A DNA stretch of 31,074 nucleotides. It comes from Histomonas meleagridis 2922-C6/04-290x. Its lineage: Eukaryota > Protista > Parabasalia. Shown piece by piece: positions 18,665-31,074 of the stretch. The DNA is taken from contig JAANOX010000174.1 of assembly GCA_020184695.1 (NCBI GenBank), positions 1-31,074 on the forward strand, read 5' to 3'. The position numbers were made by a program, and so were the translations under genes. The notes under the pieces are model-generated. The model saw only the letters and a list, made by a program, of their open reading frames with translations. It was not told where the DNA came from and ran no database searches. Each line of letters opens with the position of its first letter. Within the stretch, counting starts at the first letter, position 1.

Positions 18665-19122
18665 TCCAATGTTACCTGAAAACACTCAGAAGCTGTCATT
18701 TTTTTTGTGAGGTTTTAATTATGCCAAACGGAAATTTTCTTATTTCAAGAATCGAATTATTTTCATTATCAAAACTCAGGTCTCATGATGCGTTAATCAA
18801 TCGTAAAGAGTATTATATGTTTAGAGTATTAAATTTTTTTTAAAAAATAAATTATCTTTAGAACATATTGACAATAAAATCATTTTTGATACATAATTTT
18901 AATTTCATCCAATATTTCGTATTAATTTTTTAATTTATCAAGAAATGAATCAATTTAATTTTTATTCAACCCTCAAACCGTTGAAATAGTGTACAACAAC
19001 CGTTGGTTATCCTTCACAAATTTCACAGAAACCATTTTCTTGTTTTGCTTTTTGAATGCGGGGGTGCACCAAAATGACAATCGAAAAATGTGAAATTTGT
19101 CCGCTCATTCAAAAAATGGATT

Positions 19123-19133
19123 TCATTTCACTT
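19123..19133 (+). promoter_or_regulatory. Parabasalid-type initiator (Inr) motifs upstream of actin
   Basis: Overlapping TCATTT and TCACTT within 20 nt of the actin ATG, matching the trichomonad Inr consensus TCA(C/T)(T/A). Confidence 0.6.
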
Positions 19134-19140
19134 TCATCTA

Positions 19141-20259
19141 ATGGCTGAAGACGAAGTTCAAACATTAGTTATCGATAATGGTTCTGGTATGTGCAAGGCT
19201 GGTTTCGCTGGTGATGAAGCACCACGCTCAGTTTTCCCATCAATTGTTGGTCGTCCAAAGTATGTCCAAACAATCGCCGGTGGTCAAAACAAGGATACAT
19301 ATGTTGGTGATGAAGCATGCGCTAAGGCAGGTATCCTCATCCTCAAGTACCCAATTGAACACGGTATCGTTACCAACTGGGACGATATGGAAAAGATCTG
19401 GCACCACACTTTCTACAACGAATTACGTGTTGACACAGCTGAATACCCAGTTCTTCTTACAGACGCCCCAATGAACCCAAAGGCCAACCGTGAAAAAGAT
19501 TCGAAACATTCAACGTTCCAGCATTCTATGTTGGTATCCAAGCCGTTCTTTCCCTTTACTCATCAGGTCGTACAACCGGTATCGTTTTCGATGCAGGTGA
19601 TGGTGTTTCCCACACAGTTCCAATCTACGAAGGCTACTCCCTTCCACACGCCATCATGCGTATCAACCTCGCCGGTCGTGATCTCACAGCCTACCTCCAA
19701 AAGATCCTTAACGAACGTGGTTACACCTTCACAACATCCGCCGAAAAGGAAATTGTTCGTGATATCAAGGAGAAGCACGCATATGTCGCTCTTGATTTCG
19801 ATGAAGAAATGAACAAGGCCGCCACAACATCCGAATGCGACATCTCATACACACTTCCAGATGGTAACGTCATCACCATCGCCAACGAGCGCTTCAGGTG
19901 CCCAGAACTTCTTTTCAAGCCACACTTCAACGGCTTCGAATTCGAAGGTATTGACCAAAACCCTCTTCAACTCCATCATGGCATGCGATATCGATGTCCG
20001 TAAGGATCTCTACGCTAACATTGTTCTCTCTGGTGGTACCACAATGTTCGAAGGTCTCCCAGAACGTATGGAGAAGGAAATGGTCCGCCTCGCACCACCA
20101 ACAATGAAGATCAAAGTCGTCGCCCCACCAGAACGTAAGTACGCAGTTTGGATCGGTGGCTCTATCCTTGCTTCCCTCGCCACATTCCCACAAATGGTTA
20201 TCACACGTGACGAATACAACGAAGCTGGTCCAGGAATTGTCCACCGCAAGTGCTTCTAA
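19141..20259 (+). CDS. act: Actin, with two frame disruptions in this sequence (sequencing error or pseudogene)
   Basis: [21 protein letters not shown]...IVHRKCF with strong C-ending codon bias. About 13 nt net are missing at ~19500 (after REK, before FETF), and there is a +1 base in the A-run at ~19957-19960. Confidence 0.93.
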
Positions 20260-21248: not shown

Positions 21249-21602
21249 ATGTGTACTTTGCAAAAATATTTTATTATTTTTAAATCATAGAAATATAATT
21301 TTATGTATCAACTAAACCTATTTAATATAACTTATTATAAAAGTATAAAAAAATTCAAATATGATATACAATATTTGTTTTAAAAATAATATCAGAAAAT
21401 TGCAAGTGCATTAAGATAAATAAATTTAAAAATCAACATAATTAAAATTTTAATCATAATTTTTAATATATCAAAAAATTCATTGGAATAAAAATGCGTT
21501 ATTAACAAAAAAAATTATTGTTAAAATTCATAAATAAAATGATTTTAAAAAATGATAATTAAAATAATTATTATATAATAATTATTTAAATATCTACAGG
21601 CT

Positions 21603-21676
21603 TCCTCCCTAACTCAGTTGGTTAGAGTGTCAGACTGTTAATCTGGAAGTCGTGTGTTCGAGCCACACGGGAGGAG
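21603..21676 (+). tRNA. tRNA-Asn (anticodon GTT), intact
   Basis: Full cloverleaf: acceptor TCCTCCC/GGGAGGA, D arm ACTC/GAGT, anticodon arm TCAGA-CTGTTAA-TCTGG, T arm GTGTG-TTCGAGC-CACAC, discriminator G. Confidence 0.97.
21663..21676 (+). repeat. Target-site duplication copy 1 (tRNA 3' end, CCACACGGGAGGAG)
   Basis: Exact 14-mer repeated at 24345 and 26971. The following A is also shared, so the repeat is 14-15 nt. Confidence 0.92.
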
Positions 21677-21677
21677 A

Positions 21678-24288
21678 ATGAATTTTTTTACACAGTCATT
21701 TTTACACGCTGAAAATCGAAAATATGATTCAAGACCATCTACACAACAAGATAATATACTTTTTGATCAAAACATAGCAAATTCTTCGAAATGCATACCT
21801 AATTATTTACCACAATTCATTAAGTCTACCCCTTTGCCACACTATACTCAGCCATTACTCATTAATCATATGCTTAATGTCTCAGGATTACCCTCAGGAG
21901 TCGAGATAGAAGAACAAAGATTTTACCCTTTTCGGTCCATCGACCATGGCCGTCCTTTTCAATACGAAATCCTACTTTTAAAAAATCTACATTATCGTCC
22001 TGACAAATGGTACCCATTTAATGTTGGCAACAAACCATTACCTTCATCAATTATAATTAGTGCTGACCCGAATATTAGTGTCTATTTACCTGTTTATATT
22101 TCAAATCTAGATTGCTTAATTATTCAGAGAGGTCATTGTATTATTGATCAAGATAAATGTCTTAGATTAGATGCTAGTTTAGAACCATTCAAACTTACAC
22201 AATATGAAATTGATAATAATGTTATAAATCTTAATCTTTTCTTTAACCAAAATTTATTATATTATAAGAATTTTCAACCAGTTAACATTTTTAATCATAA
22301 AACGAAATATTATAGAAGCATTGCTAAATTTTATATTACTTATTCAAATATTATTATTAATTTAAGTGAAGATTATGATTTTATTTCTAAAATCATTAAT
22401 GTTTCAAGACTTTTGATTGATTATTTACATGGTTTGAAATATAACTCAAGATATTTATTTGATACACATGATTCGATTAAATATACAATTAGTTCAAACA
22501 TGAATATTGAATCTTTCCGAGAAATATTTGCTAATACACCCAATTTATTTGAGAATATTGATGAGGAAATTAAAGATATTTTTAATAACGAACATGTGAA
22601 CCTTAAACAAAAGAATCTTGCTGTAATCAAGATGATTAATGAAAGACAAACTGAAAAGACGTATTCATCGTTTTTATATGAAAGAGATGTTCTTGGGTCT
22701 TTTACATCTAATGAATCAATATCTTTCTTAATTTCTTTATATCTACAATGCTACTTGACAGTAAGGTCGCAGTTCAATAGTTCTTTAGATATTAAGGACA
22801 ATGATGAGCATAAAGATCTGGAGTCTAATAAAGCAGAGATTAAAGAAAATCAAAAATGAAAGTTAATGAAAATTCTGATGAGAATCATATGATAAATAAT
22901 ATTGATGATAATAATGATAACGACAATGAAATTACAAATATTAAAAAAATTTGACTGATATGTTAAAATGTTTCAATATTATAATTAATTATCAAAACTT
23001 CAAATCTCATAATATATTATTCACTTTTAACTTACTTAATTCATTAACTTATCATTATCAACACCCGGAAAGTTATTGTTTCTTATTTACTGATGACGGC
23101 GTGGCTAGAGTTAAATTAAAAGAGAAGTTAATATTAGTTAAGGATCTGGATGCCTTTATTAATATATTCGATCTTGATCCAGATCCTTTAACTAATAATT
23201 TTATTGATTATTCGATTCAAGCTTTTAATCATATGTTGAATTCGAAGTATTTAATAATAATTAATTCAAAATATATGAAATTGTTTAACATTAAAAGGAA
23301 TATTTGGTTATCATTAATTCTACATATTACTTATAGAAGGAACAAAAAACCCCTTAAGCCTTCAGGTAATTGTAGATTTAGTAAATCATTATTCTATTTG
23401 ATATTAGACAATTTCATCGCTTTACCTCAATTATTATTATATACTTTATTAAATAATTCACTTCTCGACATATCAATTCTTCAGACAATTCGAATTGGAA
23501 ATATAATTATATTAGGAATTAACTTTATAACATCAATTATCCCTTATTTCTTATCTATACTATTTTACTCACTTATAAAATTGTTCAATTTATTAGTTTT
23601 TTTAATAAGCATTTATTTTATTCAATCTTCAAAGCTGTTTACCATTCTTAAACATAGTAACATTTTGGTTTCATCAAATATGATCAGAAGGAACAAAAAA
23701 CCCTATCAGCCTTCGCGTATTTGTAAATCAAACAACTTCTTTGTTTTAGATCTCATTAATTTGAAGATTTTAACAATTCTTAATCTTAATCTCAATCTCA
23801 ATCTTAATAGTTTATTATTATTGCTCATGGAAATTTATATTTTTTTAGATAAGAACATATTGTATATTTATTTGATGTATTCAAATGTAAGTGTAACAAG
23901 GAATAAATTATCAACAGAAAGTATTAATAAATATTTAAAACGAAGAAATATTTTGATTGTACTCGGAACGATCAGAAGGAACAAAAACCCTTATCAGCCT
24001 TCGCGTCTCCGCTCGTCAAACATTTTCTTTAATTTAAATATTTTATTAATTTCAGTATTGAGAAATTTGGAAACAAAGAAGATTGAAGATGAATTTGGTT
24101 CCGTTGGCTACACAGGTCTCGTTTTGCGACATAAGTTAATCCCTTTATTTTGTTCAGTCCTTAATTGGTACAATATGTTCAATATGTTCAGTGGGTTCAC
24201 TAGGTTCAGTAAGTTCATGATGCCAGTTTCCAATTGGATTGTTGGCCCCTTCCGTTGGCAACAAATCCTCAAGGTTCACACATTTTGA
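21678..24288 (+). CDS. Short-element protein (~869 aa after correcting two homopolymer indels)
   Basis: ORFs 21678-22859 and 22951-24288 are joined by a frame that is open across the same region in copy 2. The breaks lie in A-runs at ~22850 and ~22945. Confidence 0.72.
21683..21689 (+). terminator. T7 run: probable Pol III terminator for tRNA-Asn, located inside the element 5' end
   Basis: TTTTTTT begins 7 nt after the discriminator base and overlaps codons 2-5 of the element ORF (M-N-F-F-T). Confidence 0.75.
23335..24006 (+). repeat. Three dispersed ~29-37-nt internal repeats (AGAAGGAACAAAAA..CC.TA..AGCCTTC; peptide RRNK[K/N]PxxPS)
   Basis: Copies at 23335-23363, 23682-23718 and 23970-24006; the last two match at 35/37 nt. 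Also present in copy 2 at 25958-25986, 26305-26341 and 26594-26630. Confidence 0.88.
23779..23808 (+). repeat. (CTYAAT)5 hexamer repeat encoding (LN)5
   Basis: cttaatcttaatctcaatctcaatcttaat; also at 26402-26431. Confidence 0.8.
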
Positions 24289-24344
24289 TTTTAATTCCTT
24301 TTGATCTTTAAAACACCTAATTATAATGATATTTAATGAATAAA

Positions 24345-24358
24345 CCACACGGGAGGAG
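24345..24358 (+). repeat. Target-site duplication copy 2 (tRNA 3' fragment)
   Basis: CCACACGGGAGGAG, exact. Confidence 0.92.
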
Positions 24359-26970
24359 AATGAATTTTTTTACACAGTCATTTTTACACGCTGAAAATCG
24401 AAAATATGATTCAAGACCATCTACACAACAAGATAATATACTTTTTGATCAAAACATAGCAAATTCTTCGAAATGCATACCTAATTATTTACCACAATTC
24501 ATTAAGTCTACCCCTTTGCCACACTATACTCAGCCATTACTCATTAATCATATGCTTAATGTCTCAGGATTACCCTCAGGAGTCGAGATAGAAGAACAAA
24601 GATTTTACCCTTTTCGGTCCATCGACCATGGCCGTCCTTTTCAATACGAAATCCTACTTTTAAAAGGTTTACATTATCGTCCTGACAAATGGTACCCATT
24701 TAATGTTGATAACAAACCATTACCTTCATCAATTATAATTAGTGCTGACCCGAATATTAGTGTCTATTTACCTGTTTATATTTCAAATCTAGATTGCTTA
24801 ATTATTCAGAGAGGTCATTGTATTATTGATCAAGATAAATGTCTTAGATTAGATGTTAGTTTAGAACCATTCAAACTTACACAATATGAAATTGATAATA
24901 ATGTTATAAATCTTAATCTTTTCTTTAACCAAAATTTATTATATTATAAGAATTTTCAACATTCAAATATTATTATTAATTTAAGTGAAGATTATGATTT
25001 TTATTTCTAAAATCATTAATGTTTCAAGACTTTTGATTGATTATTTACATGGTTTGAAATATAACTCAAGATATTTATTTGATACACATGATTCGATTAA
25101 ATATACAATTAGTTCAAACATGAATATTGAATCTTTCCGAGAAATATTTGCTAATACACCCAAATTTATTTGAGAATATTGATGAGGAAATTAAAGATAT
25201 TTTTAATAACGAACATGTGAACCTTAAACAAAAGAATCTTGCTGTAATCAAGATGATTAATGAAAGACAAACTGAAAAGACTTATTCATCGTTTTTATAT
25301 GAAAGAGATGTTCTTGGGTCTTTTACATCTAATGAATCAATATCTTTCTTAATTTCTTTATATCTACAATGCTACTTGACAGTAAGGTCGCAGTTCAATA
25401 GTTCTTTAGATATTAAGGACAATGATGAGCATAAAGATCTGGAGTCTAATAAAGCAGAGATTAAAAAAAAAAAAAAAATGAAAGTTAATGAAAATTCTGA
25501 TGAGAATCATATGATAAATAATATTAATGACAATAATAATTATAACGACAATGAAATTACAAATATTAAAAATTTGACTGATATGTTAAAATGTTTCAAT
25601 ATTATAATTAATTATCAAAACTTCAAATCTCATAATATATTATTCACTTTTAACTTACTTAATTCATTAACTTATCATTATCAACACCCGGAAAGTTATT
25701 GTTTCTTATTTACTGATGACGGCGTGGCTAGAGTTAAATTAAAAAAGAAGTTAATATTAGTTAAGGATCTGGATGCCTTTATTAATATATTCGATCTTGA
25801 TCCAGATCCTTTAACTAATAATTTTATTGATTATTCGATTCAAGCTTTTAATCATATGTTGAATTCGAAGTATTTAATAATAATTAATTCAAAATATATG
25901 AAATTGTTTAACATTAAAAGGAATATTTGGTTATCATTAATTCTACATATTACTTATAGAAGGAACAAAAAACCCCTTAAGCCTTCAGGTAATTGTAGAT
26001 TTAGTAAATCATTATTCTATTTGATATTAGACAATTTCATCGCTTTACCTCAATTATTATTATATACTTTATTAAATAATTCACTTCTCGACATATCAAT
26101 TCTTCAGACAATTCGAATTGGAAATATAATTATCTTAGGAATTAACTTTATAACATCAATTATCCCTTATTTCTTATCTATACTATTTTACTCACTTATA
26201 AAATTGTTCAATTTATTAGTTTCTTTAATAAGCATTTATTTTATTCAATCTTCAAAGCTGTTTACCATTCTTAAACATAGTAACATTTTGGTTTCATCAA
26301 ATATGATCAGAAGGAACAAAAAACCCTATCAGCCTTCGCGTATTTGTAAATCAAACAACTTCTTTGTTTTAGATCTCATTAATTTGAAGATTTTAACAAT
26401 TCTTAATCTTAATCTCAATCTCAATCTTAATAGTTTATTATTATTGCTTATTGAAATTTATATATTTTTAGATAAGAACATATTGTATATTTATTTGATG
26501 TATTCAAATGTAAGTGTAACAAGGAATAAATTATCAACAGAAAGTATTAATAAATATTTAAAACGAAGAAATATTTTTGATTGTACTCGGAATGATCAGA
26601 AGTAACAAAAACCCTTATCAGCCTTCGCGTCTCCGCTCGTCAAACATTTTTCTTTAATTTAAATATTTTTATTAATTACAGTATTTAGAAATTTGGAAAC
26701 GAAGAAGATTGAAGATGATTTTGGTTCCGTTGGCTACACAGGTCTCGTTTTGCGACATAAGTTAATCCCTTTATTTTGTTCAGTCCTTAATTGGTACAAT
26801 ATGTTCAATATGTTCAGTGGGTTCACTAGGTTCAGTAAGTTCATGATGCCAGTTTCCAATTGGATTGTTGGCCCCTTCCGTTGGCAACAAATCCTCAAGG
26901 TTCACACATTTTGATTTTAATTCCTTTTGATCTTTAAAACACCTAATTATGATGATATTTAATGAATAAA
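24359..26970 (+). mobile_element. Short (2612 bp) tRNA-Asn-inserted element, copy 2
   Basis: Same termini as copy 1. Differs by scattered substitutions, an in-frame 63-nt deletion (copy 1 22279-22341), an in-frame 3-nt insertion and homopolymer indels. Confidence 0.8.
24360..26914 (+). CDS. Short-element protein, copy 2 (~849 aa after correcting five +1 homopolymer insertions)
   Basis: ORF pieces 24360-25010, 24985-25173, 25127-26605 and 26693-26914 are collinear with copy 1. Every break is an extra T or A in a homopolymer run. Confidence 0.68.
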
Positions 26971-26984
26971 CCACACGGGAGGAG
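26971..26984 (+). repeat. Target-site duplication copy 3 (tRNA 3' fragment)
   Basis: CCACACGGGAGGAG, exact. Confidence 0.92.
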
Positions 26985-26985
26985 A

Positions 26986-26992
26986 TTTTTTT
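26986..26992 (+). terminator. T7 run immediately after the third tRNA 3' fragment
   Basis: GGAG-A-TTTTTTT-GATTTTTC-ATG. It is either the long element's 5' end or the tRNA's original terminator. Confidence 0.55.
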
Positions 26993-27000
26993 GATTTTTC

Positions 27001-30000
27001 ATGAATATTGATTTTTTGCGTCCGAGAACCCGATTTTCGGAAATAACTCCCCCAGGGCACTCGATTGATACCAGTTTTGTTCGGTCGGAAAAAAATTATC
27101 AGATAAATATATTGCGGAAAAAATCCGACACTACTCATGAAATAACGGCACAAGACCACAGGATAGAACCGATTATTGAAGAGGAAGCCCCAGACCTCGA
27201 ACAAAAAGAAAATGATGAAGATTTTGTTCTTGAGATTAATCAAGAACTTCCATTTCAACAAGAAATTTTATTAATACGAGGTCGTCATTACCACCCAACA
27301 CCAACAAGCCCAGAAGGAACACCATTACCTCCACCACCAAATTGGGTGATTATTTCATCAGATATTAATATTCTCAGATTTTTACCTATACAATGTAATG
27401 ACTCAAATGGGGCTATTCTAGCACGAGGACAAGCTATTATTCAACATGATATATTAAGAATTAATACCCACAATCCTCCCATTCCTACAACGATAGAGGA
27501 ATTTGACAGAGGTCTACTCGATTTACGTCCTATTATAGGACCAAACAGACTTAGAGAATCCCCGTTTAGATTATTTTGGGAATGATGAACAGATTTCTCA
27601 CATTAGGAATGAAGCTCAGATCATTGTGTATAATATTCTTAATCAACAACAGATAAATATTAATTCTTCTAATAATACTTGGAATTTATTACAAATTAAT
27701 TGCAATTATGATTTTTCGAATAACTTTATAAACTCATGTTCACCAGTTCAAAACAATACCAAAATTGGTTTTATTGCATTTGGTCAAGATAACAGATCAA
27801 TTAATCAAAATAATGCAACTTTTAATTTTACTAATTCACCATTTGTTGAAGAAACAGAAGATATTCAAGCTCAGGCTATTACTTATGATTTGGATTCAGA
27901 AGAACCTTCATTTGAACCCGAACTCGAATTTCCAACAATAAATTCTGATTCTCAAGATTTTCAAGTTACTCCATCCTTTAATCCCGGAAATATCACAACT
28001 GAATCAGATTCATTAGAAGTTATACCTAAGAGAAACATTTTTAACTGCTAGTCCTAGAATTGATAAATTACATATCAGCAAAGTTAATAACATTATAACA
28101 GAAGATGCTCAAATAGATAACTTAATAAATAAACCAATTATTAATACTATTACTTCCAACCCGATTAATGAAGAACATAAAGTAATACCTATTAACAAAA
28201 CTATAATTTCTGAACCAATTAATGAAGAACACAAAGTTGAACCATTAAATAAAACTATAATTTCTAATCCAATAAAGGAAAAACAAAAGGTTGAACCAAT
28301 TAATATAACTAAAACTTCTAAACCTTTGGTAGAAAGTCATATTAATGAACCGGTTTATACAACTAAAAACTTCAAATCCTATATCTGAAAGTCATGTTGT
28401 TATACCAGAGTATCAAAACGTTACTTCAACCCCAACTGTTCTTTCTCACGATATCAAAGTTATTGAAGGTTGTAAAACTTCAGTAGCTAATGTTGAAAGT
28501 TTAAAAGTTACTGTTAATGAAGTGGATTTAACTTATGATGCTGAAATTCCTCAAATGAAAATCAATATTATCAAAGAAACTAAAACAATAGATGTTATAG
28601 TCCCAATTTTGGAATTTAATTATATCAGTGTTCCAAAATTTTTTTTACCAATTACTAATTTATCTACTTTTTCTTCAGATGATTCAACTTACAATGCTTT
28701 AGATACTTATTCAGATGATAATGTTAATCATATCACTTCTACTGATACTTCAAATAATGATCCATCAAATAATCCTTCTTTTTCCTGATCCTTCTGATTC
28801 AGAGGGTTCAGATGATTCAGATTCCGGAATTGATGATATTAGTGATTTATTACCAGATGATATTATTTATAATAAATTAATTAGTGACTTAAAACTTTGT
28901 AGATTACCTGATGATATTAAAGATTTTATTAATAAATGGAAGAATTTAAATAACTTAAATTGTTGGAAACATGAAGATATTAATTTAGCTAAACAACCAT
29001 TAATTCATATTATGATTAGAGAAAATAAAATGGTGTGCACCAGGTCAATTCCCTTGTCAATGTGAATGTTATAAATTAACTAAATCAGGTAATGATTTGA
29101 TTAGTCATATGACTAAAGTTCATAATCATAAACCTGATCAAAATCATTTATATGGTTGCATTAAATATTTAATCAATAATGATTTATATTGGAAATTAAT
29201 TTATGAAGAAGATAAACCTGAGTGTTATCGAAATAATGTTTACGTTTGTCCAATACCTAATTGTAAATATTTTTTTCAAATACAAATAAATCCCTTTTTC
29301 TCTCATATTACTTATTCTCATAAAGATTTTTGAGAAAAATGAAGAATTCTATTGGTTGGTTTTTGGTCTACAATGTTACAATATGTTAATACTTACGACA
29401 AAAATTCCTTCATGTTTAGATATAATTAAACTTAAAGAAGGTTTTTGTTTGTAAATATTGTGAAACATATTGGACTTCTGATTCTAAAGGTTTACATAAT
29501 CATTGTAAAAAAAGAATCATGCATTAAATACTATTGAAGGTACAAATTTACCTTATTATAGAATTAAATGTTGTCCTTTAATGTATTTAAATTTTTAATG
29601 AAACAGAATTAGAAGTAATTAAAAAAGATATCAAAGATTATGAAGATAAAGTGTTTATGAGTAGAACAATCACAGAAAGAGAAAGATTAGCGGTCAGAGA
29701 AATTCCTTTCATTTTAAATAATGAACAAACAAATGCTATGGAACAAAGACAAAGAAGAGAAGAAAATGACCGTATTAATTTAAATAGAGATTTACAATTA
29801 CAAGCAATTCAAAATTCCCGAACATTAAATTTAACTCCTCCAGATCAAATACATCCCCCAGTAAATTTAAATTTAATTAATAATGAATTTGATTTAAATA
29901 AAATTAAAAATTTAAATAGAGACCAATTATTAATTTTAGCTAGAAAATGGACTTCTGATAATCAAGAACAAGAATCTCAATTTATATCATTACCTAAAAC

Positions 30001-31074
30001 TTGGGGTAAAAATAATAAATTTAAAAATTAGAGCTAAATTACCAGATTTATTTAAATATAAAATCGAACCTTTAATAGAAATTTGTAAACCTCAAGATTA
30101 TAATAATTGTAATGATGAAGATTTTTATATTTGGGAAGGTTGCCTTTCTAAAATTAATATGTTAATTCGTGATGAATTAAGAGATATTTTAAAAATTCCG
30201 TTGAATAAAATGTTAAACAGAAGGAACACAGTAGTCACTAGCACAGAAGATAGAATAGATCTTCGTAACAAAGAAATGGAGACACATAATTTATGTAAAA
30301 TTACGTTTTGGTTAAACAAATTTAAAGATTTATATCATAAGCCTCAATCTCAATTTATTCTTAATACAATGTCTAAACTTCAAGAAAAGATTATTAAAAA
30401 CCATCAATTTCCTCCCGGATGAAATAAAATCTATTCTTGAAATTAATGAGCCTCAAGATATTATAAATCTAATACAATCAGCGGAAGACTATTATGAAAA
30501 TAAAATCAAATTCATTGATGCTAAAATTAAAGAAAATCAAGTTAGTAATAATAATAAAAAAAATCAAAACTATAAAGGTTTAGTACAAAATCTTTACATG
30601 GAAGATCCTAGTAGATGTTTACGTTGGTTTATCACTAATAATACGACTCCTGAATGTAAGTTAAATCCTGAAGATTTTTATGATGGAATATGGTAATAAT
30701 TGGAGTCAAGAAAAAAATTTATTAATGACTCCCAGGAATTTGATTTTTAAAGATATTATTAACCCTAATAGTAATGAATTATTATTAAATTATATTTTTT
30801 TGATGATGATAATATTAAACATGCAATTTTTCTAGATCTAATGCGGCTGCTTATGGTCCCGATGGTATTTCTAATTATATTTGGAAATTAGGAGATACTA
30901 CTACTATTAAATTAATTAAAATTACTACTAAAATTACTATGTTAACTAAAAAATGTCCTGAATTATTTAAATTAAGTAAAACAATTATGTTATACAAAAA
31001 AGGTGATGCTCAAAATCCTCATTCTTGGAGACCTATTTCTATTACTCCTACTTTTTATCGTATTTGGATGGTAT
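27001..31074 (+). CDS. Retrotransposon polyprotein (shared N-terminal domain, low-complexity and repeat region, 3x C2H2, start of RT); many single-base frameshifts; 3'-partial
   Basis: All fragments are on + and reconnect across homopolymer indels (e.g. RLF|GNDEQISH at ~27575, TK|TSNP at ~28368). The RT-containing last frame is missing from the supplied ORF track. Confidence 0.8.
28134..28404 (+). repeat. Five tandem 54-nt (18-aa) repeats inside the polyprotein
   Basis: PIINTITSNPINEEHKVI / PINKTIISEPINEEHKVE / PLNKTIISNPIKEKQKVE / PINITKTSKPLVESHINE / PVYTTKTSNPISESHVVI. Confidence 0.85.
29055..29520 (+). other. Three C2H2 zinc fingers of the retrotransposon protein
   Basis: CQCECYKLTKSGNDLISHMTKVH (29055-29123), CPIPNCKYFF...SHITYSH (29247-29321) and CKYCETYWTSDSKGLHNHCKK.H (29450-29520). 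Confidence 0.82.

What the first reader, a model, noticed from the sequence alone, without database searches (positions are those of the whole stretch)
21954..27525. Unrecognised N-terminal domain shared by the short elements and the RT element
Seen: short-element PFQYEILLLKNLHYRP…IIISADPNISVYLPV…IIQRGHCIIDQD.CLRLD (21954-22233; also in copy 2) aligns collinearly with long-element PFQQEILLIRGRHYHP…VIISSDINILRFLPI…ILARGQAIIQHD.ILRIN (27250-27525). Identities are 10/16, 8/15 and 6/12 in the three blocks, while the DNA is not obviously alignable. I recognise no family for it. Inference: the two families share an old common origin, and the domain is a candidate for tRNA-locus targeting (DNA binding or TFIIIC/Pol III tethering), RNP assembly or proteolytic processing.
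Basis: partly seen in the sequence, partly recalled or inferred. Interest (0 to 1): 0.8.

Follow-up and report, generated by a model that had tools for sequence, protein, structure and literature searches.

The report
Orphan domain shared by tRNA-Asn retrotransposons
A roughly 140-residue protein domain with no known relatives sits at the start of every R2-like retrotransposon that inserts at the exact end of the tRNA-Asn gene in the poultry parasite Histomonas and its kin, and a shorter protein-coding partner element without reverse transcriptase or nuclease domains has kept this domain too, which suggests the partner uses it to borrow the copying machinery.

Summary
Third codon positions are saturated, so the conservation is at protein level.

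The window is Histomonas meleagridis. Two tandem ~2.65-kb coding elements that lack RT and nuclease domains, then an R2-like element (three C2H2 fingers, RT), sit head to tail at the last base of a tRNA-Asn gene. Each is preceded by the same 15 nt of the tRNA.

A profile search of 1.84 billion proteins found the domain only in such elements. A deeper local profile found it in nine full-length RT proteins, all in one RT clade.

- **Junctions:** every junction examined repeats the tRNA-Asn 3' end.
- **Sister lineage:** one nested lineage checked, at tRNA-Glu, lacks the domain. A second, whose junction I did not assign, lacks it too.

AlphaFold models the domain confidently (pLDDT >90). Foldseek, VIA-align, ESM Atlas, Pfam and PDB profile searches found no relative.

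Common origin of the two families is supported. The function is not settled. I favour a docking or RNP-assembly module (about 0.4) over direct target recognition (about 0.25). A protease role is unlikely.

It is a new variant of site-specific non-LTR retrotransposons with an orphan domain. The scan had already noted tRNA-Asn elements elsewhere in this genome.

The parts
21602..21677 (+). tRNA-Asn(GTT) gene, the target. The first element begins at the base after the discriminator A.
   Evidence: ARAGORN. It is identical to the tRNA-Asn genes in L005 and in metagenome locus L011.
21663..21677 (+). The last 15 nt of the tRNA (CCACACGGGAGGAGA). This is the first of three copies, each lying immediately before an element.
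   Evidence: 3 exact matches in the window, 0 expected by chance.
24345..24359 (+). Second copy of the 15-mer. It is the last 15 nt of short element 1 and lies immediately before short element 2.
26971..26985 (+). Third copy of the 15-mer. It is the last 15 nt of short element 2 and lies immediately before the long element.
21678..24359 (+). Short element copy 1 (2682 nt). It starts with ATG at its first base. In this copy the ORF is broken by a frameshift at codon 393.
   Evidence: With the differences shown by a contig from an RNA-labelled run, the element reads as a single ORF of 870 codons.
24360..26985 (+). Short element copy 2 (2626 nt). It has a ~60-nt deletion and frameshifts relative to copy 1.
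26986..31074 (+). 5' part of the long R2-like element, running off the window end. The reading frame is broken several times in this copy.
   Evidence: It is 95% identical in the domain to H. meleagridis protein P0001.
21912..22346 (+). N-terminal domain, short element copy 1.
   Evidence: hmmsearch on six-frame translations, E=5e-30; BLASTP.
24594..24956 (+). N-terminal domain, short element copy 2.
   Evidence: hmmsearch, E=5e-31.
27124..27579 (+). N-terminal domain of the long element. Its C-terminal end is cut by a frameshift near 27583.
   Evidence: hmmsearch, E=7e-54. Intact relatives continue in frame.
29000..29333 (+). C2H2 zinc-finger region of the long element. The second finger, CPIPNCKYF...H...SH, is at about 29247-29321.
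   Evidence: The same three-finger block is at residues 628-781 of the intact relative P0009.
30837..31074 (+). Start of the reverse-transcriptase domain (YGPDGI ... KKGD ... WRPISI motifs).
   Evidence: The equivalent region of P0009 matches Pfam RVT_1 (E=2.8e-32) and solved R2 proteins (E=4e-52).

Best explanation
**Shown**
- The stretch is a real, protein-level conserved domain of about 140 residues, here called NTD. It lies 40-200 residues from the N-terminus of a clade of R2-like retrotransposon proteins.
- These proteins have three C2H2 fingers, an RT, a CCHC motif and a restriction-like endonuclease.
- The elements insert at the last base of tRNA-Asn genes in Histomonas meleagridis and in related organisms known only from metagenomes.
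- A second, old family of ~2.3-2.7-kb elements uses the same site. It encodes one protein of 735-870 residues with no RT, no zinc fingers and no nuclease, so it cannot copy itself. The first ~250 residues, including the NTD, are all it shares with the long elements.

**Inferred**
- The NTD is a protein-protein docking or RNP-assembly module.
- The short element's protein binds its own RNA as it is made. Through the NTD it then joins the long element's protein or RNP, and so borrows RT and nuclease.
- This resembles ORF1-only (HAL1-type) elements borrowing L1 ORF2p.
- Site choice itself would come from the zinc fingers and nuclease, and from pairing of the 15-nt tRNA-derived RNA end with the nicked target.
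For: **Homology and selection**
- BLASTP E=2e-14.
- Third codon positions are at the composition expectation, and 19 of 37 identical residues use different codons.
- The NTD is a conservation island in long proteins: 0.27-0.34 mean pairwise identity against 0.14-0.22 in its flanks, similar to the zinc-finger block.

**Distribution**
- The family occurs only in element proteins among 1.84 billion searched.
- It is present in 9 full-length RT proteins, all within one RT clade with 100/98 support.

**The short family is coding and old**
- The window copy and metagenome protein P0003 are homologous along their whole length: 39% identity over 321 aligned positions at the N-terminal end, 32% over 428 at the C-terminal end.
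- A copy in an RNA-labelled run reads as one ORF of 870 codons.

**What the two families share**
- Only residues ~2-254 of the short protein match the long protein.
- The short protein therefore lacks the canonical DNA-binding fingers as well as the RT and nuclease of P0009.

**The domain itself**
- It is a compact, confidently modelled fold (pLDDT >90 over about 135 residues, pTM 0.71).
- It has only one near-invariant basic residue, which fits a protein-binding surface better than a nucleic-acid-binding one.
- The nested tRNA-Glu lineage has an intact 2072-residue ORF without the NTD. The NTD is therefore accessory rather than part of the core TPRT machinery.
Against: - No interaction, oligomeric state or binding was tested, so the mechanism is inference.
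- The domain is tied to tRNA-Asn junctions and is missing from the nested tRNA-Glu lineage. That is what a target-linked role would predict.
- A docking role does not by itself explain why that lineage could drop the domain.
- The short family's NTD sits on a long branch (2.3 substitutions per site) and has lost the conserved Trp. That could mean a changed function.
- The C-terminal 600 residues of the short protein could not be modelled (pLDDT 30) and have no homologues. Their assumed RNA-binding role has no support.
Confidence: 0.4

Rival explanations
1. Target-linked module. The NTD recognises something specific to the tRNA-Asn site: the gene's DNA, the tRNA-derived 15-nt RNA end of the element, or a factor bound there. 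It holds long and short proteins at that site. The short protein would then act as a separate targeting or adaptor subunit.
For: - Every junction examined in NTD-bearing elements repeats the tRNA-Asn 3' end: the window, L002-L005 and L010-L013, plus a degenerate copy in L006.
- Within the same RT clade, the nested P0042/P0049 lineage sits at tRNA-Glu(CTC). It lacks the NTD by six-frame HMM and by hhalign.
- That lineage keeps only short vestiges, EAPEI and PPQRIMITATDQ.
- No NTD was found in about 39 RT proteins of the other clades.
Against: - The association rests on one, perhaps two, loss events, so lineage history can explain it.
- The three C2H2 fingers, the usual R2 DNA-recognition module, are conserved in both the Asn and the Glu lineages.
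- Only one basic residue is near-invariant in the NTD.
- No similarity to any nucleic-acid-binding fold was found.
- Targets of six NTD-bearing RT proteins (P0026, P0028, P0030, P0033, P0038, P0041) were not checked.
Confidence: 0.25
2. Host-factor or cell-biology module. The NTD does something each element needs for its own protein or RNA, regardless of partner or target. Examples are binding a host protein, nuclear import, protecting the RNP, or blocking a host defence. Each element therefore keeps its own copy.
For: - The domain is an orphan fold found only in these elements, with no relative anywhere.
- It is accessory, since the tRNA-Glu lineage does without it.
- The region just before the domain is strongly acidic.
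Against: Nothing points to a particular host partner. This reading does not explain why the NTD is the only part of the long protein that the partner kept.
Confidence: 0.2
3. Self-processing protease or other enzyme at the N-terminus of the polyprotein.
For: - H, D, R and E/Q positions are conserved.
- Relatives in other RT clades carry ubiquitin-hydrolase (PF00443) domains upstream of the RT.
- Other RLE elements are known to carry Ulp1-like proteases (PMC4640811).
Against: - No Cys or Ser nucleophile and no aspartic-protease motif is conserved.
- No hit to any enzyme family or fold was found.
- A polyprotein-processing protease has no obvious use in an RT-less partner protein.
Confidence: 0.05
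4. The similarity is not a functional protein domain. It would be either a nucleic-acid-level 5' signal (promoter, ribozyme, IRES) that happens to be translated, or a decaying remnant of a recent deletion derivative.
For: The 5' ends here do carry conserved nucleotide motifs, namely T-runs and a stretch complementary to the tRNA end.
Against: - Third codon positions are saturated while second positions are conserved.
- The ORFs stay open over 735-870 codons in AT-rich DNA.
- The two short-family members are only 39-43% identical, yet keep the same motif residues as the long elements.
Confidence: 0.05

Closest known systems
R2 and other restriction-like-endonuclease (RLE) site-specific non-LTR retrotransposons (R2, NeSL, Utopia, R8/R9)
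   Same: - The relative P0009 is a single ORF with N-terminal C2H2 fingers, a non-LTR RT, a CCHC motif and a PD-(D/E)xK nuclease.
- Solved R2 proteins are its best PDB matches (E=4e-52).
- Insertion is nucleotide-exact into a multicopy RNA gene, with head-to-tail arrays.
   Different: - The target is the exact 3' end of tRNA-Asn, and the tRNA is left whole.
- The proteins are about twice as long (2100-2400 residues).
- An orphan ~140-residue domain lies ahead of the fingers.
- I found no description of such tRNA-end elements in parabasalids in the paper library. Absence from that library is not proof.
HAL1 / ORF1-only non-autonomous LINE partners
   Same: A non-autonomous element that still encodes a conserved protein, sharing only the non-enzymatic N-terminal function with its autonomous partner. 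It must borrow RT and nuclease in trans (general knowledge of HAL1; works-like comparison only).
   Different: HAL1 derives from two-ORF, APE-type L1 elements, and its protein is a known RNA-binding chaperone. Here the partner belongs to a single-ORF RLE lineage. Its protein has a unique C-terminal part of about 600 residues, without homologues.
R2 SIDEs (short internally deleted elements) and SINEs
   Same: Short elements at the same site as the autonomous element, with the same 3' terminal motif. A non-coding 1.18-kb element of this kind lies in the same array in L012.
   Different: The window's short elements are not simple deletion derivatives and not non-coding. The ORF fills the element, and 70% of it is unrelated to the long element.
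tRNA-gene-targeting retrotransposons that tether to Pol III factors (Dictyostelium TRE5/TRE3, yeast Ty3)
   Same: tRNA genes serve as safe havens in a compact genome (PMC5006619, listed).
   Different: Those elements insert at a distance from any tRNA gene by reading TFIIIB/TFIIIC (general knowledge; PMC3159450 abstract). The elements here insert at one base of one tRNA species with a fixed 15-nt repeat, which is the behaviour of a sequence-specific nuclease.

Membership tests
RLE-type (R2-group) non-LTR retrotransposon (long element) | Non-LTR-type reverse transcriptase | tested here: met
   RT motifs lie at the window end. The intact relative P0009 matches RVT_1 at E=2.8e-32 and solved R2 proteins at E=4e-52.
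RLE-type (R2-group) non-LTR retrotransposon (long element) | N-terminal C2H2 zinc fingers | tested here: met
   The finger CPIPNCKYF...H...SH is at about 29247-29321. Three fingers are present in P0009, P0026, P0031, P0036 and P0042.
RLE-type (R2-group) non-LTR retrotransposon (long element) | C-terminal CCHC motif and restriction-like endonuclease | tested here: inconclusive
   In P0009 a CCHC motif is at residue 1835, followed by KPD...E.T, and the R2 match has a second stretch. The window copy ends inside the RT, so this could not be seen for the window copy itself.
RLE-type (R2-group) non-LTR retrotransposon (long element) | Sequence-specific insertion into a repeated gene | tested here: met
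   The same junction, at the last base of tRNA-Asn, occurs in the window and in 8 other loci, plus a degenerate copy in L006.
R2 proper | Insertion into the 28S rRNA gene R2 site | tested here: not met
   The target is tRNA-Asn.
SINE / SIDE (short elements) | Non-coding, or a plain internal deletion of the autonomous element | tested here: not met
   The ORF of 735-870 codons is conserved between two hosts. Only the first ~250 residues are related to the long element.
Any described protein domain family (Pfam) or solved/predicted fold, for the NTD | Significant sequence-profile or structural match | tested here: not met
   - Pfam: none.
- PDB profile search: 0 hits at E<=10.
- Foldseek PDB: best E=0.46, TM 0.12.
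- AFDB clusters: best E=0.57.
- VIA-align wide: best Z=2.7.
- ESM Atlas: TM<=0.30 by shape, score <=0.43 by features.
   The near-invariant residues are H, Y, P, D, P and R. No Cys or Ser column is conserved.
Pol III-factor tethering module (TRE5-A ORF1 / Ty3 integrase type) | Binds TFIIIB/TFIIIC and gives distance-based insertion near any tRNA gene | not testable with these tools
   The insertion pattern is base-exact and specific to one tRNA identity, which this model does not predict. Binding itself was not tested.

The most novel reading that the evidence does not exclude
The NTD is the part that ties these elements to the tRNA-Asn site. The RT-less short element would then be a second, separately encoded subunit of a two-component retrotransposition system. 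Its NTD protein would mark or hold the tRNA-Asn target, or the tRNA-derived RNA end, and recruit RT and nuclease made by another element. Losing the domain would have gone together with the switch to tRNA-Glu. This would be a new fold for site choice in target-primed reverse transcription, separable from the zinc fingers.
Probability: 0.2. Interest if true: 0.85.

Novelty: new variant of a known kind. Interest (0 to 1): 0.62.

Why it matters
Site-specific R2-type retrotransposons are being developed for safe-harbour gene insertion (reviewed in PMC13580325). How their N-terminal regions set target choice and RNP assembly is an active question in that field.

This clade offers three things:
- A target that is a tRNA 3' end, left functional after insertion.
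- A confidently folded accessory domain with no known relative.
- A natural experiment: a protein-coding partner that kept only this domain, and a nested lineage at another tRNA that lost it.

If the domain proves to be a docking or targeting handle, it would show how a non-autonomous element can hijack a single-ORF retrotransposon through protein rather than RNA mimicry. It would also provide a portable module to test in engineered systems.

If it proves to be a lineage-specific accessory, the result is still a new domain family and the first described protein-coding parasite of an RLE element, as far as the library I searched shows.

Tried and rejected
- **Wrong collection.** `search for related loci` in genome contigs holds only prokaryotes and gave nothing.
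- **Searches that returned only the query.** Word-based search with P0009 residues 1-260, and with the short protein's C-terminal 496 residues. The length filter and word index limit both.
- **Pfam** on all window pieces and on eight homologues gave nothing for the domain. A few sub-threshold hits (Gemini_V2, STAT_linker, HTH_44) are noise.
- **Structure searches.** Four libraries gave no match. Scattered OB-fold and tRNA-synthetase rows at E>2 and TM about 0.1 were not taken as evidence.
- **AlphaFold of the whole short protein** (6-row alignment) failed with pLDDT 30, so no fold search was run on it.
hhalign of the short family against the long family finds no match outside the N-terminus (probabilities 0.3 and 0.1).
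- **NTD hidden in the tRNA-Glu lineage.** Six-frame HMM and hhalign were both negative. Only two short vestigial motifs are visible.
- **A conserved 5' RNA structure as the reason for the conservation.** RNAalifold gives only -0.74 kcal/mol, and codon analysis points to protein-level selection.
- **Transcript start sites.** The reads tool served only contigs, so start sites could not be read.
- **Proline-rich hits** P0013-P0015 from the big search were discarded as low-complexity matches.

Full report
**1. What is in the window**

The window is from Histomonas meleagridis. Its 14-3-3 protein is encoded on contig WSYJ01000130.1 of assembly GCA_020186115.1. PMC9615429 treats that assembly as one of two H. 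meleagridis assemblies.

A tRNA-Asn(GTT) gene lies at 21602-21677. Directly after its last base come three elements in a row:
- short element 1, 21678-24359;
- short element 2, 24360-26985;
- a long element from 26986 to the window end.

Each of the three is preceded by the same 15 nt, CCACACGGGAGGAGA, which are the last 15 nt of the tRNA. There are 3 exact matches where 0 are expected.

The long element carries C2H2 zinc fingers near 29250-29320. Non-LTR RT motifs begin near 30840.

**2.

- BLASTP of the short ORF (21654-22859) against the long ORF (27001-27585) gives one collinear match: 37/108 identities, E=2e-14.
- The DNA has indeed diverged to saturation. Identity at codon positions 1/2/3 is 0.36/0.57/0.38, and composition alone predicts 0.36 at third positions. 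19 of the 37 identical residues use different codons.
- The conservation is therefore on the protein, not on an RNA or DNA signal.

**3. The family**

A profile of the three window copies was searched against 1.84 billion representative proteins. It returned 17 hits: 12 clear ones and two weaker fragments that a deeper profile confirmed. The other three are proline-rich repeat proteins.

The real hits come from H. meleagridis (for example KAH0789353.1, mislabelled 'titin') and from short metagenome contigs.

One hit, P0009, is a complete 2101-residue protein. Its layout is:

| Region | Residues (approx.) |
|---|---|
| Leader | 1-60 |
| NTD | 62-201 |
| Repeats | 220-500 |
| Three C2H2 fingers | 628-781 |
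| RT | 1150-1660 |
| CCHC motif | 1835 |
| PD-(D/E)xK-type nuclease motif | about 1905-1925 |

The best solved relatives of P0009 are R2 proteins (E=4e-52).

A search with its RT found about 50 related long RT proteins. A deeper local profile then found the domain in eight more of them.

In an RT tree, all nine NTD-bearing proteins fall in one clade of 18 with 100/98 support. Five of the nine NTD-less members of that clade are much shorter proteins (1165-1792 residues), probably truncated at the N-terminus. In the long proteins the NTD is a conserved island between variable stretches.

**4. All hits checked are tRNA-Asn elements**

- In L002, L003, L004, L005, L010, L011, L012 and L013 the element starts right after the 15-mer, or after its first 14 nt in L003. 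L006 carries a degenerate copy of it.
- L005 and L011 contain the whole tRNA-Asn gene. It is identical to the window's.
- The 3' ends share ...AATAAAC... followed by the 15-mer.
- L008 and L009 begin inside the ORF, so their junctions are not visible.

**5. A nested lineage at another tRNA lacks the domain**

P0042/P0049 and P0032/P0035 branch inside the NTD clade, with 93/92 support for their placement.

- P0042 sits at the 3' end of tRNA-Glu(CTC), with about 22 nt of the tRNA end repeated with two mismatches. It has an intact 2072-residue ORF with the same three fingers.
- P0042 has no NTD by six-frame HMM or by hhalign. Only two short motifs recall it.
- L015 (P0032) also lacks it. Its junction resembles another tRNA end, which I did not assign.

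**6. The short elements are an old, coding, non-autonomous family**

- The window's short protein and metagenome protein P0003 (735 residues) are homologous along their whole length, at 39% identity in the N-terminal part and 32% in the C-terminal part.
- A 2104-nt contig from an RNA-labelled run of the same organism matches 22284-24385. Its differences from the window turn copy 1 into a single ORF of 870 codons, starting at the element's first base. The run's RNA label is a guess, so this shows an intact copy rather than proven transcription.
- Short and long proteins share only residues ~2-254 against 5-217 (hhalign 94%, nothing else).
- The short-family NTDs form one clade (100/100) nested among one group of long-element NTDs, on a long stem.
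- The short protein has no fingers, RT or nuclease, and its C-terminal part has no homologues.

**7. Fold**

AlphaFold2, run on a 26-row alignment, models residues 45-180 of the query (P0001 residues 30-230) at pLDDT >90, with pTM 0.71. The model is a compact, mainly beta domain followed by a long helix.

Nothing resembles it:
- Foldseek PDB, best E=0.46;
- AFDB clusters, best E=0.57;
- VIA-align wide, best Z=2.7, where unmatched models usually reach 7-8;
- ESM Atlas, TM<=0.30;
- PDB profile search, no hit;
- language-model features, score <=0.43.

The near-invariant residues are H, Y, P, D, P and R, plus frequent G, Q and E. No nucleophile typical of proteases is conserved, and only one basic residue is.

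**8. Reading**

Shown: this is a real orphan domain, specific to a tRNA-Asn-targeting R2-like clade, and an RT-less coding partner has retained it under selection.

Inferred: because the partner kept this part and nothing else of the long protein, the domain most likely gives the partner's protein (with its RNA) access to the long element's machinery, by docking or RNP assembly. This works like ORF1-only partners of L1.

The main rival is a target-linked role. The Asn-only distribution and the loss in the tRNA-Glu lineage favour it. The conserved finger block, the lack of conserved basic residues and the small number of independent events count against it.

Base-exact insertion specific to one tRNA argues against simple Pol III-factor tethering as the source of specificity.

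I found no paper describing these elements. That library is incomplete.

**9. Earlier notes of the scan**

Other windows of this genome were noted as holding tRNA-Asn elements, and R2-like elements at the 3' ends of tRNA-Ile, Cys, Met, Arg and Tyr genes. I did not examine those loci.

The big profile search found no NTD in H. meleagridis proteins other than Asn-family ones. This fits restriction to the Asn family but depends on gene calls.

Noticed in passing
L014:190-300 and L014:6530-6640: A sister R2-like lineage (P0042, 2072 residues, intact ORF) is inserted at the exact 3' end of a tRNA-Glu(CTC) gene, with about 22 nt of the tRNA end repeated with two mismatches. It comes from a GC-richer metagenome organism and has the same three zinc fingers but no NTD.
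   Followed up: partly
L012:6982-8161: A 1.18-kb element without a long ORF lies between two long elements in the same tRNA-Asn array. It is bounded by the same 15-mer. It looks like a non-coding (SIDE/SINE-like) third kind of passenger at this site.
   Followed up: no
proteins P0047, P0048, P0052, P0053, P0056, P0060, P0062: Several very long RT proteins (up to 3451 residues) in a neighbouring RT clade carry a ubiquitin carboxyl-terminal hydrolase domain (PF00443) upstream of the RT. This is a deubiquitinase-bearing RLE retrotransposon lineage, known only from metagenome contigs.
   Followed up: no
window:27035-27065; L002:955-985; L005:9050-9075: About 55-65 nt into the long elements lies a conserved stretch (GAATCTACTCC; TTCTCCTCC in the L005 and L006 copies). 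It is complementary to the tRNA 3' end GGAGGAGA that precedes the element. Small hairpins nearby differ in sequence between subfamilies. RNAalifold support is weak (-0.74 kcal/mol), and the stretch is also coding (ESTP).
   Followed up: partly
window:21678-21692, 24360-24374 and 26986-27010: Each element begins with a run of 6-7 T within its first 12 nt (ATGAATTTTTTT in the short elements, TTTTTTTGATTTTTCATG in the long one). The tRNA gene therefore gets a Pol III terminator from the insert. The same holds in all metagenome junctions.
   Followed up: partly
window:23335-24016 and 25958-26640: The short-element ORF contains three copies of a motif encoding RRN(K/N)KPxxPSxxC, spaced about 290-350 nt apart. 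Two copies are conserved in the metagenome relative P0003. Its function is unknown.
   Followed up: no
window:19090-20259: A divergent actin gene reads in three different frames (ORFs 19090-19812, 19656-20003 and 19861-20259). It is either a pseudogene or contains indel errors of the long-read assembly. The long retrotransposon copy is also broken by many frame changes, so assembly errors should be kept in mind.
   Followed up: no
window:8947-13788 (-): A 1613-residue ORF in very AT-rich DNA (GC 0.21-0.23) has only a weak Laminin_G_3 / concanavalin-like hit (E=0.004).
   Followed up: no
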